Of a DNA stretch of 64,000 nucleotides, positions 13,444-38,071 are shown piece by piece; the stretch's first letter is position 1, and every line of letters starts with the position of its first letter. Made by a program: the position numbers and the translations under genes. Location: positions 27,962,001 through 28,026,000 of the forward strand of contig NC_135665.1 of NCBI RefSeq assembly GCF_964188315.1, in the 5' to 3' direction. Under the pieces are notes generated by a model. That model did no database searches. It worked only from the letters and a program-made list of their open reading frames with translations, and had not been told where the DNA came from. The DNA comes from Podarcis muralis. Lineage: Eukaryota.

Positions 13444-13519
13444 ATCTAGAGGACATGTCAAGTATGGAAGAAACCCAGATTTTATTTTGTGGCATCAAGT
13501 GTCACAACGGAAAGAAGTC
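13444..13519 (+). repeat. 76-bp direct repeat, left copy
   Basis: 75/76 identical to 14787-14862 (C13493 vs T14836); begins ATCTAGAG. Confidence 0.97.
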
Positions 13520-13538
13520 AAAGTCAACGGAAAGAAAG

Positions 13539-14786
13539 CAGTGTTTCCCAACCGGTGTTCCGCGGCACGCTAGTGTGCCGCGACACGTTGCCTGGTGTGC
13601 CGTGGGAGGGAGGCGGGCGAGTCGGGCGGCGAGAGGCGGGGCGGAGGCGGCGGGGAGAGGCCGCCCAGCGCGGGGCTCTCGCCGTCTGCCTGCCTGGCTG
13701 CCTGCATGGCATGGCGCTGACGTCACGGGGCTGTAACGTGCCCCACATAGGCACGCTTAGACCCTGGCTAGGAAGCGCCTTTGCCCTTGCCTTTTGCTCT
13801 CCTTACTTCCAGAAAGCTGGGCTGGTCGCCCGCTCCTCTCGGCGGTGGGAAGTGGTGCCGCTGGGAGCTCCGGGAGGCGGCGGAGGGGGCGCCGTGGGCC
13901 GGGAAGCCCCTCTCCGTCGGGGCCGGCAGGCGGCTGCCACTGCTGCTACGGGTGCTGTACAGCCTGGTGCTGGCGATGCCTTCGGAGCCGCCGCCGCCTC
14001 CGCTGCTGCGCGGGAACTCCTTGTGCGAGCGGCTCAGCTGCTTGCCTTTGCTGCGGAAAACCTCGCGCTTGTAGGTGCCGCTGGCTTGCGGTGTCGGCGC
14101 CGCGCTCTTGGGCAGCGGCTGCAGCGTGCGCTCCGTCCTGCCGGGCTCGTTGGTGAAGTGGACGGGCCTCAGGAAGCAGATGTCGATGCTGGACTCGGAC
14201 GAGGCCAGCGAGCACGCTTCGAAGGCGGGCAGGTTCCGCAGCGGCTCCACCTCCTCGTAAGGGTTGCCCCGGTACTCGAAGCCCTCGTAGTCCGGTGTGA
14301 AGCCGGAGCTGTCCTGCAGGAGGTCCGCCGCCGAGGCCCGCCGACGGGGCCGCTCGCGGTTGCCGTCGGGGCCCGTCGAAGGAGGCGCACTGCTGCCGCC
14401 GTACTCCAGGTCCGGGAGGGCGTGCAGGGAGGCGGCCAGAGCTTTCAGGTCGTGCTCGCTGAGCTGAGAGGGCGCCAGGTCGTGCTCGGGCCGCCGCCCG
14501 TCCGTTTCCCACTCGCAAGGGGAAGCGCCTTGCAGGCCGTCGAGGCCTTGCTGGGGGCTCGCTTTCATGTGGGACCTCGAGTGCCTTGGAAGGGAGACCA
14601 ATCAGTGTCGGATTTAGGTATAAGCTAAACAAGCTATAGCTTACCATTACCTTCTATGCTGTTACTATTTTTTTTTTTTTTTACATAGGTAAAAAGTGAC
14701 CTTTCCCCATCTGGCATGGTGGTGTGCCTCGAGATTTTTTTCATGAAACAAGTGTGCCTTTGCCCAAAAAAGGTTGGGAAACACTG
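13539..14786. mobile_element. Non-autonomous hAT (Charlie-like) transposon carrying a captured gene fragment (Pack-TIR-like)
   Basis: Perfect 15-bp TIRs CAGTGTTTCCCAACC (13539-13553) and GGTTGGGAAACACTG (14772-14786). Subterminal GTGTGCC motifs at both ends. Right flank ATCTAGAG matches the Charlie NTCTAGAN target. No transposase ORF. Confidence 0.92.
13768..14601 (-). pseudogene. Captured fragment of a vertebrate terminal coding exon (Ser/Pro/Arg/Gly-rich, probably disordered C-terminal tail); parent gene not recognised
   Basis: 277-codon open frame with strong G/C-ending codons (e.g. GAC CTG GCG CCC TCT CAG CTC AGC GAG CAC GAC CTG) and protein-like motifs (RRASAADLL, YEGFEYRGNPYEEV, SSESSIDICFLRPV). 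Ends ...AKGKGKGAS*. Entirely inside the TIRs. The listed start is a TTG at the junction, so the true 5' end is missing. Confidence 0.75.
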
Positions 14787-14862
14787 ATCTAGAGGACATG
14801 TCAAGTATGGAAGAAACCCAGATTTTATTTTGTGGTATCAAGTGTCACAACGGAAAGAAGTC
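14787..14862 (+). repeat. 76-bp direct repeat, right copy
   Basis: Abuts the right TIR; 75/76 identical to 13444-13519. Confidence 0.97.
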
Positions 14863-16423: not shown

Positions 16424-17596
16424 ATGTGGATCTTATTAAGAACATATACGAAAGGAAGAGGGCACTTGTGGCTACACAGTGGTACAGCAATCTGACCATT
16501 ATGGGCTAGAGCAATGCTCCATCTTCAGACTTTTCTTTCAGGTTCTATCCAGTGTTATTCCGACAATAAACAGCCGGTTTGTCCTCCTGCCAATAAATTC
16601 AACCCATTTACTTTTATGCCTGAAAGTATCCTTATTCAAAAGGAAGACCTCCTCTTTACTTCATTGCTTTGTCAATGAAACTAGGCTGTCAGGCAACCCC
16701 ACATTTAATAAGGGCCAGACAGCATGCTATGCTAGCTATGTTATCTGTGCCCTTAACTGCAGGTTTTTTGTTTTCTTTTTCTTTTAAAGCCAACTTGTAA
16801 AAGCACATATTGCCAGTGCAGTGGAGGAGGAGGTGGGGGCAGTCATTGGGCTATCCAGATCCCAATCCGAATCAGGACTCTTAACCCTTTCTGTGGTCTT
16901 TATCCAAATTGGACTGCTGCCCCTGCAATTTGCACTGGTGAAAAACTCCCATTCATTTCAGTGGAAGATTTCCTCCTCCAGTGCAGGTGCAGAGCCCCTG
17001 ATCCAGATCAAGACCATAGTGGTGGACAAAGGATTGAAGACCCATCTCTTCCCACTAGGGTCCCAAACTGGATTGCACCTTGCAGACAATCTCCCCCCCC
17101 CCCTTCTTTCCCCCCTCTCTCTTCATTTAAGGCACAAGTAGACAGACTGGCTTTAAGCTGTATGAATAAGTGGGAAAGGAATGGATACCTTGTCCAAAAT
17201 CACTCAGCACATCATGGCTATGTAATAAGGGATCTAGGATTTCTATGATGCCCTCTGTTTTTATGCATCAATTGGAGATTTTATATTCATCACCCAGATA
17301 GAAATCAGCAGGTGAAGCATTTCATTGCATGCAGGTAAGCTAATGTCTCTTTTCCAATCTACTGTTAAGAGCATAAGCAGAGGAGCCTGTAAAGAGCAAC
17401 TCTCATTGGATCTGCCTTTGAAAATATATGAGAATCAGCAAAAAAGATGGATGAATTTTGTGTTGTAAGATAAAATCTGATTGAACTATCTTCTAGCCAT
17501 TGGAAATTATATGCCCAAGGCATGGTTTTGTGATAGGCTCACAGATACACAGAAAGGTGCACCTCAAGAATTACTGGACTTGCTTTGAACTCAGAT

Positions 17597-17898
17597 CACA
17601 TCTGTGCCATGTGCTTAAAGCACTATTATGCCCCTTTAACGGTCATGGACTCCTACGAAGAATTCTGGGAACTGTAGTTTGTAGCTTTGTGAAGGGAATT
17701 GCAATTAATCTCTATAGTTGCCTGGGAAAACAGAGATTGATTTATAAACCTTTAGGAGAACTGTAGCTCTGTGAGGGCAGAAGGGGTCTCCTAACATCTC
17801 TAAGCACCCTCAACAAACTACAGTTCCCAGGATTCTTTGGGGGAAGCCATGGCTGTTAATGTGGCATAATGCTGCTTTAAACATATGGTGTGGATGTG
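17597..17898. mobile_element. Palindromic (fold-back) MITE-like element
   Basis: Imperfect TIRs CACATCTGTGCCATGTGCTTAAAGCA / TGCTTTAAACATATGGTGTGGATGTG, plus internal inverted GGGAACTGTAGTTT / AAACTACAGTTCCC. Superfamily not determined. Confidence 0.75.
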
Positions 17899-18149
17899 TG
17901 TTAACTCAGTGTTCATTATCATCATCATAGAAGGCAAATGCTATTTAATAGTATTGTTATGGGTTTTGGGGTGCCAGAGTCTGGGGGTGCCTGGATTTAG
18001 TAAGTGCTAACATCTGGTCAATGCTTGGAGAGTTAAACTGGAAGTCAGACCCTTAATAGCAGCTTCCTGTGTCCAGGCCAGGCTGATAATGGCAGAGTTG
18101 TTCATGATCCATGTCATCTGTCATGGATGCTTTAGCTGAGATTCCTGCA

Positions 18150-19894: not shown

Positions 19895-20554
19895 CTGGTA
19901 GGAACATAAAAGGTTAGATTACCTGGGTTTTCCTTATAGGCTGCTTTAATAGTAAGGCTCGCCCAGACCTAACGCTTTCGCCTCAGCAGAGAGTTTTGGG
20001 GAACCGTAATTAGTTTCTGTGGAATACAGTTAAATTAAAGCAGGATGATGTTCAAGGGCCCTCAATACTGGAATTAATTTTCTCCCTTGGTCTCAAATAG
20101 CCTGAATCAGTCGAGCTTCAGTGCATGGTGCACAGCTTATCTGTTTGAATGGGTCTTCGGGGATGGCTGAGGTGAAAGGGGCATAAAGAAAGCATAGGTT
20201 CAGGATTTTTCTTTTGCCTGAATTATTTTCTAGCTTTTGTTCTCTCTCTCTCTCAGCTTAACAGCAACACATTACACTTCACGCTTTGTTCCAAACACTG
20301 TGCCTGGTTTCCTAATAGTTTGCTGCTACAGCATGTAGTCACATTTTTAATAACGGGAATGGAGGACCAAGAGCTGCTATGTTCTTTTACGGCAGCTATT
20401 ACCTTGTTCGTTTCTGTTTATTTAAACTTGAATGGACATGCAGTCAATTATTTATTACTATCCCACTTTCTCCAAGGAGCTCAGAGTGACTTATAAGCTC
20501 CTTCACATTTTATCCTCAGAACAGTCCTGCAGGTGGGCTGCGATCCCTAAGGGT

Positions 20555-20890
20555 GGGTTCTATGGGGAGCTGGCACCAGGCCCATTGGCAGAGCAACTCT
20601 GTGTTACAAAGGTGTCTATGAATGTGACATGAAGGCTGGCAACAACAACCCAGCCGTGTGGGAATCCCTTGCAGATGATCACAGTGCCTGGAGACAGGCA
20701 GTCAAGTTGTGTATCCACAGCAGTGACCAAGGAGAAATGACCGCTGGGAGGAATGCAGTGAGAAGGCACGCCATGGTGCATCTGCAGCAGCACAACTGGA
20801 CTCCTTCATCTGCCCAGCTGCAACAACACATGTCTCTCTCGCATCGGTCTCTACAGCCACAGCAGGCGCTGCAACTGAGTCTAAGACAAG
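20555..20890 (+). mobile_element. RTE-clade LINE (non-Bov-B) 3' end, degraded
   Basis: YGELAPG..., WESLADDHSAWRQAV and a C-terminal CCHH-like remnant (TTCATCTGCCC...CGCATCGGTCTCTACAGCCACAGC). Confidence 0.8.
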
Positions 20891-21489
20891 GAATTCCAGA
20901 ATATTAGCCTTGTTTCACCGTCCTAGGCTTCATCAGTAGTACAAACACATATATGATATCACAGGACAGTGGATCTTATAGCATAGTAGTAGCATAGCAT
21001 AGAAAGGATTCTGTGGAACTGCAACAACCTTTCGTGTGGATTGTTGGACTCTATGAACAGACAGGTGGAATAGACACTTTCACATATATGGACCTTATGC
21101 ATAAACTGATTAGAGAATGAACTGAGCCACTGGGTCTTCTACTTTTTCCGTTGAACTTTACGAGCTACTTCTGTTGAAATCTACAATTCAGTACAATGAA
21201 TAGTATATACTAGTTTTTCAAACGTGCAGCCAGTTACGCCTTGTGTGTTTATTGAAGATGTTTCACGTAACCAGAGGTTTGTTGTTGTTTTGCAACTGTC
21301 CAACAAGCTTGACCTCACCCCCTAAGGCGCACTTCTCCATTGTCTCCTCAGATGCCAACCTATCGTGCTGGCTAGGAAGGAATCAGAAAAAGCGTTCTCT
21401 TGGAGGATTATGACAACGTTATTCTGGTATAGCCCTTGGACATGACAGCCAGAAGTTGGATATATGGTGCTTTTCCTGGATGGAGAGGA

Positions 21490-37766: not shown

Positions 37767-37854
37767 GGTCAGAGCCAATCAGGTGTGCCTTTCAACTCAG
37801 TCACATGGCTGGGAGGGGAGAGCAATGATCAGGTTCCCCCACTCAGTAAATTCT

Positions 37855-38071
37855 TTCCAGTAGCACCTTAAAGACCAACTAAGTTAGTTCTTGGTATGAG
37901 CTTTCGTGTGCATGCACACTTCTTCAGATATTCTTCAGATATGTATCTGAAGAAGTGTGCATGCACACGAAAGCTCATACCAAGAACTAACTTAGTTGGT
38001 CTTTAAGGTGCTACTGGAAGGAATTTTTTTTGTTTTGACTATGGCAGACCAACACGGCTACCCATCTGTAA
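37855..38071 (+). mobile_element. Penelope-like element: truncated pLTR with inverted copy (fold-back) and 12-bp flanking duplication
   Basis: Perfect 76-bp inverted arms at 37855-37930 and 37944-38019; TCAGTAAATTCT at 37843-37854 and 38072-38083; CTGAAGAAG...CGAAAGCTC pLTR motif. Confidence 0.85.
37943..37980 (+). ncRNA. Putative minimal type I hammerhead ribozyme (mirror copy on the minus strand in the left arm)
   Basis: GTAT-CTGAAGA-A-GTGTGCATGCACAC-GAAA-GC-TC-ATAC gives stem I, the catalytic core, palindromic stem II and a self-complementary AGCU stem III. Confidence 0.6.

What the first reader, a model, noticed from the sequence alone, without database searches (positions are those of the whole stretch)
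13539..14786. hAT (Charlie-like) Pack-TIR element carrying an intact ~277-codon host exon fragment
Seen: perfect 15-bp TIRs and hAT subterminal motifs enclose about 1 kb of CpG/GC-rich DNA that differs sharply from its flanks. Most of it is one minus-strand open frame (13768-14601) with vertebrate-like GC3 bias and a natural-looking stop. There is no transposase, and no AATAAA or poly(A) after the stop. Known: capture of gene fragments by TIR elements is common in plants (Pack-MULEs) and has been reported only sparsely in animals (Pack-TIRs). Inference: a non-autonomous hAT captured the terminal exon of a cellular gene at the DNA level. The perfect TIRs and unbroken frame suggest the event is recent. 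If the element is multi-copy, it would be an active exon-shuffling vehicle in a lizard. I could not name the parent gene.
Basis: partly seen in the sequence, partly recalled or inferred. Interest (0 to 1): 0.9.

Follow-up and report, generated by a model that had tools for sequence, protein, structure and literature searches.

The report
Lizard hAT transposon carrying ARHGEF33 exon
A small, transposase-less hAT "jumping gene" in a wall-lizard (Podarcis-like) genome has swapped part of its interior for one exon of the host gene ARHGEF33 and now sits, slowly decaying, away from that gene: a clean animal example of a known but rarely documented kind of gene-fragment capture.

Summary
Perfect 15-bp TIRs (13539-13553, 14772-14786) enclose 1,248 bp with no transposase, 71% GC, and a 277-codon minus-strand ORF.

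The parent gene is ARHGEF33. Window 14643..13754 (minus strand) is 94-96% identical to the native loci of three Podarcis species. It holds the penultimate coding exon, not the terminal one, plus 59 nt and 53 nt of flanking intron with both splice sites. The "natural stop" is read-through into intron. No other ARHGEF33 exon lies in the 64-kb window, although the native gene spans only 17-22 kb.

The remaining parts (13539-13753, 14644-14786), including about 150 bp of GC-rich DNA with a CRE site, are family backbone. They match a P. muralis copy that has a perfect 8-bp TSD and an empty site in P. raffonei.

The copy carries 8 private changes, 7 of them CpG transitions. Two hit invariant residues, so it looks neutral and methylated.

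At this site the 8-bp target ATCTAGAG is present, but its left copy is displaced by a 68-bp flank duplicate plus 19-bp filler.

The scan had already noted the 76-bp duplication (s1-152834) and many similar hAT elements in this genome.

This is a new member of a known kind (animal Pack-TIR, Tan et al. 2021). Multi-copy status is unproven.

The parts
13444..13519 (+). Upstream copy of the 76-bp flank duplication. Its first 8 bp (13444-13451, ATCTAGAG) are read as the displaced left target-site duplication.
   Evidence: identical to 14787-14862 except for 1 mismatch. ATCTAGAG matches the P. muralis copy's TSD GTCTACAG at 6 of 8 positions.
13520..13538 (+). 19-bp filler AAAGTCAACGGAAAGAAAG between the flank duplicate and the left TIR.
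   Evidence: shares an exact 12-mer, CAACGGAAAGAA, with the sequence immediately upstream, as in templated repair synthesis.
13539..13553 (+). Left terminal inverted repeat CAGTGTTTCCCAACC.
13539..13753 (+). Family backbone, left arm: the TIR, GTGTGCC subterminal repeats, and a GC-rich promoter-like stretch with a CRE palindrome (TGACGTCA, 13718-13725) and GC boxes.
   Evidence: homologous to P. muralis copy L011 9014-9237 (11 substitutions, a 5-bp indel and an 11-bp indel). No homology to the native ARHGEF33 loci.
13754..13806 (-). Captured 53 nt of the ARHGEF33 intron downstream of the exon. It starts with the 5' splice site GTAAGG and contains the ORF's stop codon (13768-13770).
   Evidence: homology to all three native Podarcis loci ends at 13754.
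13807..14584 (-). Captured penultimate coding exon of ARHGEF33: 778 nt, intron phase 2 at its start and phase 0 at its end.
   Evidence: matches residues 494-749 of the 794-aa P. muralis protein, and is 96.2% identical to residues 468-727 of P. raffonei. Private changes lie at 14389, 14296, 14265, 14207, 14092, 14024, 13939 and 13846.
14585..14643 (-). Captured 59 nt of the upstream ARHGEF33 intron with its 3' splice site (cccttccaag|G).
   Evidence: homology to the native loci starts at 14643.
14644..14786 (+). Family backbone, right arm: AT-rich, with a T15 run (14668-14682), two GTGTGCC repeats and the right TIR (14772-14786).
   Evidence: 1 substitution and one 2-bp indel against P. muralis copy L011 9714-9870.
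14787..14862 (+). Original right flank. Its first 8 bp (ATCTAGAG, 14787-14794) are the right target-site duplication.

Best explanation
This is a Pack-TIR: a non-autonomous hAT element whose interior has been partly replaced by host DNA.

The family is about 860 bp long. It has the TIR CAGTGTTTCCCAACC, an 8-bp TSD, and a CpG-island-like interior with CRE and GC-box motifs. It transposed in Podarcis after the species split.

In one copy, about 480 bp of interior was replaced by 890 bp copied from the host gene ARHGEF33. The copied piece is the penultimate coding exon plus 59 nt and 53 nt of flanking intron. In lacertids this piece is itself an isolated intragenic CpG island.

The junctions carry only 1-3 bp of microhomology. 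This fits template switching during double-strand-break or gap repair of the element (inferred).

The composite now lies outside the ARHGEF33 gene at the target ATCTAGAG. Its left junction carries an extra 68-bp copy of the right flank plus a 19-bp templated filler. That is a repair scar, either from an aberrant integration or from an aborted excision (inferred).

The cargo is not maintained as coding sequence. Since capture it has gained 8 private changes, 7 of them CpG-to-TpG/CpA transitions. These include P-to-L and L-to-H at residues invariant or nearly invariant across the vertebrate sequences aligned. This is the pattern of a methylated, neutrally decaying copy.

The element cannot move by itself. 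It would need a hAT transposase supplied in trans.
For: Shown:
- TIRs and composition.
- ARHGEF33 identity.
- Homology to the native P. raffonei, P. muralis and P. lilfordi loci is confined to 14643..13754 in all three: 96.1%, 94.3% and 96.3%.
- No other ARHGEF33 exon in the window at E<=1 with the Podarcis proteins, while the native genes span only 17-22 kb.
- Both arms match an independent copy in a P. muralis intron that has the perfect TSD GTCTACAG and a clean empty site in P. raffonei.
- The cargo|backbone junction AAGCG|TGCCTATGTGG is present in two independent public read-set contigs, L008 and L009, so it is not a reference-assembly artefact.
- dN/dS of the cargo against other species is 0.06-0.19, the same as native-versus-native pairs. 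So nearly all of its divergence arose while it was a working exon.
- 8 private changes, 7 at CpG.
- The six changes shared by all Pack sequences but absent from the three native loci are all non-CpG. This is expected if they arose in the source species' native gene.
- The right-flank 8-mer ATCTAGAG matches the other copy's TSD at 6 of 8 positions and begins the upstream duplicate.
Against: - The window's own genome could not be searched. The true parent copy, its distance from this site, and the copy number are therefore unknown.
- The cargo is about as far from each of the three native Podarcis exons (1.5-2.1%) as they are from each other. An older capture with slow decay is not strictly excluded.
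- L008 and L009 share none of the window's 8 private changes, an 8:0 asymmetry that is unexplained. They may be other or younger copies, or de Bruijn mosaics of the native exon with Pack ends.
- The microhomologies are too short to be significant by themselves.
- The family consensus rests on a single outside copy.
- No transposase source was identified.
Confidence: 0.85

Rival explanations
1. In-situ, transposition-independent gap filling. An ordinary family member already sat at this window site. A break in it, or an attempted excision, was repaired by copying the ARHGEF33 CpG-island exon from elsewhere. The same messy repair produced the 68-bp flank copy and the filler. On this reading the Pack element never transposed. 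(This is a variant of the main reading that differs only in where the capture happened.)
For: Tan et al. 2021 (PMC8277862) find that most single-copy animal Pack-TIRs arise this way. The window copy carries two separate repair signatures: the interior replacement with 1-3 bp microhomology, and the flank duplication with templated filler. One complex repair event explains both economically.
Against: That model shows a strong cis bias, with 56.9% of copies within 15 kb of the parent. No ARHGEF33 sequence lies within 13.5 kb on one side or 49 kb on the other. The Pack junction occurs in other read sets with a cleaner sequence, which hints at more than one copy or lineage. The family was demonstrably mobile recently.
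Confidence: 0.3
2. Composite mobilisation. Two family members, or two stray ends, flanked the exon in the native gene, and transposase moved the whole interval. On this reading there was no template switching into one element.
For: P. muralis has a family member inside ARHGEF33 about 7 kb from the exon. So the family does land in this gene.
Against: The native loci of three Podarcis species have no family TIR or arm homology next to the exon. The two arms in the window equal the two halves of one ordinary element, with its middle replaced. The cargo ends only 53-59 nt outside the exon on both sides.
Confidence: 0.06
3. The copy is functional. It could be an exonised module in a host transcript, a new small protein (MKASPQQ..., 266 aa), or a source of antisense RNA against ARHGEF33 driven by the backbone's CRE/GC-box promoter-like arm.
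For: Both splice sites are intact. The frame is open. The promoter-like arm lies upstream of the cargo in the antisense direction. [quoted passage not shown]
Against: 7 of the 8 private changes are CpG decay. Two replace residues invariant or nearly invariant across the vertebrates aligned. The open frame is expected by composition, since the antisense ORF is longer. The exon is not phase-symmetric (phase 2 at its start, phase 0 at its end). There is no poly(A) signal. No expression data are available.
Confidence: 0.07
4. Native exon, assembly chimera, or chance TIRs. On this reading the structure is not a real transposon insertion.
For: None beyond the initial possibility.
Against: - The flanks are a continuous sequence interrupted by the element.
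- No neighbouring ARHGEF33 exons are present.
- The same cargo|backbone junction occurs in independent read sets.
- The arms match a transposon copy with a TSD and an empty site in another species.
Confidence: 0.01

Closest known systems
Animal Pack-TIRs, e.g. Pack-hAT-N8_XT carrying a CAPSL 5'UTR piece in Xenopus tropicalis (Tan et al. 2021, Nat Commun, PMC8277862)
   Same: A non-autonomous hAT with both termini intact. The interior is replaced by a few hundred bp of host genic DNA copied at the DNA level. The junctions carry short microhomology. The element is young and non-coding for transposase. hAT is the commonest superfamily among the 370 animal cases (208).
   Different: - The cargo here is a whole internal coding exon with both splice sites, and it is itself a CpG island.
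- The copy lies outside the parent gene and shows no sign of the cis proximity typical of single-copy cases.
- The insertion site carries a 68-bp flank copy plus filler between the TSD and the TIR.
- The paper's main text does not mention lizards.
Pack-MULEs of rice and other plants
   Same: TIR elements carrying host gene fragments. From my own knowledge of Jiang et al. 2011 PNAS (not checked here), Pack-MULEs show a bias toward acquiring GC-rich gene pieces. That parallels the capture of a CpG island here.
   Different: The superfamily differs: Mutator with 9-10 bp TSDs and long TIRs, versus hAT with an 8-bp TSD and 15-bp TIRs. Plants have thousands of copies. Here one capture is documented.
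Internally deleted or filler-containing Ac/Ds-type hAT derivatives made by abortive gap repair (established knowledge, not checked here)
   Same: The termini are retained and the interior is lost. Foreign or nearby 'filler' DNA is inserted at microhomology junctions. Repair scars occur at element ends.
   Different: Fillers in Ds derivatives are usually short. Here the filler is an 890-bp exon-bearing segment from a host gene.
Helitron gene capture (bats, maize)
   Same: A DNA transposon carrying host exon or promoter fragments and spreading them.
   Different: Helitrons have no TIRs and no TSD, and use a rolling-circle mechanism. None of their hallmarks is present here.

Membership tests
hAT superfamily | Short TIRs (about 10-25 bp) beginning with the YARNG motif | tested here: met
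   The 15-bp perfect TIRs begin CAGTG. The YARNG rule is from established knowledge.
hAT superfamily | 8-bp target-site duplication | tested here: met
   The family copy in P. muralis (L011 9014-9870) has the perfect TSD GTCTACAG and a single-copy empty site in P. raffonei. In the window, the 8-mer ATCTAGAG abuts the right TIR. Its second copy lies 87 bp left of the left TIR, at the head of the flank duplicate. So the feature is met for the family and only in displaced form for this copy.
hAT superfamily | Target-site consensus (nTnnnnAn for the Ac group, nnnTAnnn for the Buster/Charlie group) | tested here: inconclusive
   Both known targets (GTCTACAG and ATCTAGAG) fit both consensus patterns. 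With n=2 this cannot separate the subgroups. The consensus patterns are recalled from the literature.
hAT superfamily | hAT transposase (BED zinc finger, RNase-H-like catalytic domain, hAT dimerisation domain) | tested here: not met
   No Pfam domain in any long ORF of the element. This is expected for a non-autonomous member. The autonomous partner was not identified.
   No TE consensus library is available here. The resemblance of CAGTG.TT.CCAACC to MER5/Charlie-type ends is from memory only.
Pack-TIR (criteria of Tan et al. 2021) | Both flanking ends cover at least 10 bp of the termini of the same TE | tested here: met
   The arms of 215 bp and 143 bp align end to end with the two ends of the P. 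muralis family copy.
Pack-TIR (criteria of Tan et al. 2021) | Internal non-TE sequence of 100-5000 bp, with a length ratio to the parental copy of 80-120% | tested here: met
   890 bp of cargo, against 894, 882 and 891 bp in the three native loci.
Pack-TIR (criteria of Tan et al. 2021) | A unique parental copy at 90% identity or more in the same genome | not testable with these tools
   The window's genome cannot be searched. By proxy, identity is 94-96% to native exons of three congeners, and 99% to L008/L009.
Pack-TIR (criteria of Tan et al. 2021) | The parental copy is not itself flanked by TEs within 100 bp (this excludes segmental duplication), and the cargo is not an intronless retrocopy | tested here: met
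   No family ends lie next to the exon in L010, L011 or L012. The cargo retains intron on both sides, with both splice sites. This was checked in congeners, not in the source genome.
ARHGEF33 (as a functional gene copy) | DH (RhoGEF) domain and the full exon set | tested here: not met
   Only residues about 494-749 of 794 are present. There is no PF00621 hit and no other exon in the window. It is a gene fragment, not a gene.

The most novel reading that the evidence does not exclude
This Podarcis hAT family may be a serial collector and spreader of CpG islands.

Its standard interior is a mosaic of promoter-like CpG-island pieces with CRE, NRF1-like and GC-box motifs. The one identifiable fresh acquisition is again exactly a CpG island: the isolated intragenic island formed by the ARHGEF33 exon.

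If capture is biased toward unmethylated, break-prone or hotspot DNA, and the Pack copies are multi-copy and mobile, the family would seed promoter-like or hotspot DNA and spliceable exons around a vertebrate genome. It would be an animal counterpart of GC-biased Pack-MULE acquisition.
Probability: 0.2. Interest if true: 0.7.

Novelty: new member of a known kind. Interest (0 to 1): 0.42.

Why it matters
Well-documented animal Pack-TIRs are few. This case has a named parent gene, base-pair breakpoints, an outside copy that defines the backbone, and a demonstrated recent insertion with an empty site in a sister species.

It offers a tractable case for asking how TIR elements pick up host DNA in vertebrates, and whether CpG islands are preferred.

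It also has practical value for this scan. It shows that the many "hAT with CpG-island cargo" notes in this genome mostly describe one family's ordinary interior, not separate captures.

For the host, this copy is most likely a neutral, decaying fragment.

Tried and rejected
- **Pfam on the ORF and the antisense ORFs:** no domains.
- **Pfam on ten other long window ORFs, to place the locus in a host gene:** nothing usable. The host gene context of the insertion remains unknown.
- **First homology search:** it returned only hits of 67% identity or less, because full-length ARHGEF33 falls outside the tool's length filter. This briefly suggested a fast-evolving or ancient copy on a long branch. 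Using long proteins as region queries revealed the lacertid orthologues at 91-96%. The lacertid native exon is itself GC3-rich.
- **L008/L009 as the native parent:** considered, then rejected. Their tails follow the hAT backbone, not the native intron of three Podarcis species.
- **The 13600-13753 GC-rich piece as a second captured promoter or as native intron:** rejected. It is shared with the P. muralis family copy.
- **Exact look-ups of the window's own ORFs in the protein collection:** not found. The P0163 contig was not on record.
- **Ancestral-sequence reconstruction in iqtree:** Polarity was inferred by parsimony using three native loci.
- **Other family copies in the window:** none.
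- **Literature search for Podarcis hAT capture:** nothing specific.

Full report
**1. What is in the sequence**

- The element spans 13539-14786 (1,248 bp) and is bounded by perfect 15-bp inverted repeats, CAGTGTTTCCCAACC. These are the only two occurrences in the 64-kb window, even allowing two mismatches.
- GTGTGCC subterminal repeats occur twice near each end.
- The interior has GC 0.71 and CpG o/e 0.90. The flanks have GC 0.41-0.50 and CpG o/e 0.21-0.28.
- The minus strand carries a 277-codon ORF, 13768-14601.
- No ORF has a Pfam domain, and no poly(A) signal exists on either strand.

**2. The parent gene**

The ORF matches ARHGEF33. The first search returned only fragments: E 9e-92 and 67% identity to Logan contigs, and 52-54% to bird 'ARG33 factor'. 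Full-length proteins are excluded by that tool's length filter.

Region-restricted searches with long ARHGEF33 proteins and a cluster look-up brought in annotated squamate orthologues. The window peptide compares as follows:

| Species or group | Identity to window peptide |
|---|---|
| Podarcis raffonei | 96.2% |
| P. lilfordi | 95.8% |
| P. muralis | 94% |
| Zootoca | 91% |
| Lacerta | 90% |
| All other squamates | 57-67% |

The window therefore comes from a lacertid, most likely a Podarcis species.

**3. It is one exon with its intron edges, away from its gene**

Three native loci were fetched:

| Locus | Species | Gene span | Match to window | Identity |
|---|---|---|---|---|
| L010 | P. 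raffonei | 17 kb | 17248-18141 | 96.1% |
| L011 | P. muralis | 18.6 kb | 16988-17869 | 94.3% |
| L012 | P. lilfordi | 22 kb | 20426-21316 | 96.3% |

- In all three, DNA homology to the window is confined to exactly 14643..13754 on the minus strand.
- This is the penultimate coding exon (window 14584..13807, 778 nt; residues 494-749 of 794 in P. muralis).
- It comes with 59 nt of upstream intron including the 3' splice site, and 53 nt of downstream intron beginning GTAAGG.
- The ORF's stop (13768-13770) is simply read-through into that intron. The same read-through peptide, VRRAKGKGK, appears in gene calls from other sauropsids.
- With the Podarcis proteins as queries, no other ARHGEF33 exon is detectable anywhere in the window at E<=1.
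- In a bird locus the next exon lies 1.6 kb away.
- This is not the native locus, and the copy was made from genomic DNA, not from mRNA.

**4. The rest is transposon backbone**

The P. muralis locus unexpectedly contains a member of the same family in an upstream ARHGEF33 intron, at L011 9014-9870 (857 bp).

- Window 13537-13754 aligns to one end of it: 11 substitutions and two indels.
- Window 14640-14794 aligns to the other end: 1 substitution and one 2-bp indel.
- That copy has a perfect 8-bp TSD, GTCTACAG. P. raffonei shows a clean empty site with a single GTCTCCAG, and P. lilfordi has no copy.
- So the family is a genuine hAT-type element that transposed after these species split.

About 150 bp of the window's GC-rich DNA (13600-13753) belongs to the family, not to the cargo. 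It carries a CRE palindrome at 13718-13725 and GC boxes.

The P. muralis copy's own 477-bp middle, which includes GCGCATGCGC, is what the ARHGEF33 segment replaces. The junctions are:

- **Upstream junction:** backbone ...GGTAATGG | TAAGCTATAGC... native. The replaced backbone read TTAGGCTAGCA.
- **Downstream junction:** native ...TCTAAGCG | TGCCTATGTGG... backbone. The backbone read ...CCGCGTGTGCC.

These give 1-3 bp of exact microhomology plus some imperfect similarity. This fits template switching during repair. By itself it is not statistically compelling.

**5. Independent support**

Two Logan contigs from other read sets are about 99% identical to the window over 900 bp: L008 from ERR14042333 and L009 from ERR14042001. 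They continue 17 bp and 45 bp past the cargo end into the backbone sequence, not into the native intron. The Pack junction is therefore real and present beyond the reference assembly.

**6. Age and selection**

- Against other species, the cargo's dN/dS is 0.06-0.19, the same as native-versus-native comparisons. Its GC3 of 0.90 is inherited.
- In native Podarcis genes this one exon is an isolated CpG island: GC 0.70-0.73, CpG o/e 0.92-1.03, GC3 0.91. The rest of the gene sits at 44% GC, with other exons at GC3 0.37-0.73.
- The orthologous exon in other sauropsids has GC 0.54-0.57 and CpG o/e 0.3-0.4.

Polarising with three native loci plus L008/L009 gives:

- **Window-private changes: 8.** Seven are CpG-to-TpG/CpA transitions. 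Three are non-synonymous: D-to-N, P-to-L and L-to-H. P-to-L and L-to-H fall at residues that are nearly invariant (conserved in at least 90% of sequences) in the 11-sequence alignment.
- **Changes shared by all Pack sequences but absent from the three natives: 6.** None is a CpG transition, as expected if they arose in the source species' functional gene.

The copy thus looks like a recent duplicate, about 0.9% diverged, decaying under methylation. A rough inference puts its age in the order of a million years.

The open frame is not evidence of constraint. The antisense frame is open for 379 codons.

One point is unexplained. L008 and L009 carry none of the window's private changes. They may be other or younger copies, or de Bruijn mosaics of the native exon with Pack ends.

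**7. The insertion site**

- The flanks carry a 76-bp direct duplication (13444-13519 = 14787-14862, 1 mismatch) and a 19-bp filler that repeats a 12-mer of the adjacent sequence.
- The 8 bp abutting the right TIR, ATCTAGAG, match the P. muralis copy's TSD at 6 of 8 positions (about 0.4% by chance, my estimate). The same 8-mer heads the upstream duplicate.
- My reading is a canonical 8-bp TSD whose left copy was separated from the TIR by 68 bp copied from the right flank plus a templated filler. This would be repair of a one-ended integration or of an aborted excision (inferred).
The TSD reading is added here.

**8. Where the capture happened is open**

- **Option 1 (about 50%).** The swap occurred in a copy elsewhere, possibly inside or near ARHGEF33, where P. 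muralis shows the family can land. The Pack element then transposed here.
- **Option 2 (about 30%).** A plain copy already sitting here was repaired with ARHGEF33 DNA in one complex event. That event also made the flank scar. This is the gap-filling model that Tan et al. favour for single-copy cases.
- The absence of the parent within 13.5 kb on one side and 49 kb on the other argues against Option 2's usual cis bias.

**9. Comparison and novelty**

- The element meets every criterion of Tan et al. 2021 for a Pack-TIR that could be tested.
- The requirement for a parental copy at 90% identity or more in the same genome could only be checked by proxy.
- hAT is the commonest carrier among their 370 animal cases.
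- This is a new member of a known kind.
- Several first-reader notes in this genome describe 850-1000-bp hAT elements with CpG-island, CRE or NRF1 'cargo'. The P. muralis copy shows this to be the family's ordinary interior. I did not verify the other claimed host captures (PKD2, RANBP9, CRPPA).

**10. Verdict**

The interest score of 0.9 is too high. The kind is known, this copy is decaying, and multi-copy activity is unproven.

Noticed in passing
L010 17248-18141 (P. raffonei), L011 16988-17869 (P. muralis), L012 20426-21316 (P. lilfordi): In native Podarcis ARHGEF33, only the penultimate coding exon is a CpG island: GC 0.70-0.73, CpG o/e 0.92-1.03, GC3 0.91. The rest of the gene is 44% GC, with other exons at GC3 0.37-0.73. 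The same exon in other squamates and birds has GC 0.54-0.57 and CpG o/e 0.3-0.4. This is a lacertid-specific intragenic CpG island, possibly a biased-gene-conversion hotspot or an internal promoter.
   Followed up: partly
L011 9014-9870: A P. muralis-specific insertion of the same hAT family in an ARHGEF33 intron. It has the perfect 8-bp TSD GTCTACAG, with a clean empty site in P. raffonei (L010 about 10765) and no copy in P. lilfordi. Its interior carries CRE, an NRF1-like GCGCATGCGC and GC boxes, with CpG o/e 0.99 in the GC-rich half.
   Followed up: yes
same genome, other windows (notes s1-153044, s1-176041, s1-152743, s1-179051, s1-152869, s1-184764, s1-189002): Many first-reader notes of 'hAT with CpG-island or promoter cargo' of about 850-1000 bp probably describe ordinary members of this one family, whose standard interior is CpG-island-like. 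They are probably not separate host captures.
   Followed up: partly
window 13777-13806 (minus strand); L001-L007: The 5' splice site and the first ~30 nt of the following intron (GTAAGGAGAGCAAAAGGCAAGGGCAAAGG, read-through peptide VRRAKGKGK) are conserved from birds to lizards. This may be a splicing regulatory element or an alternative C-terminus.
   Followed up: no
window 37848-38071: A fold-back repeat (noted earlier as a Penelope-like insertion, s1-152993) matches P. raffonei ARHGEF33 intron L010 13450-13653 in both orientations at 72-75% identity. It is an interspersed repeat family shared across Podarcis.
   Followed up: no
L008 and L009 (Logan ERR14042333, ERR14042001): These contigs carry the Pack junction but none of the window's 8 private cargo changes. 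Both contigs start at the same base, 5 bp inside the cargo boundary. The 8:0 asymmetry is unexplained.
   Followed up: partly
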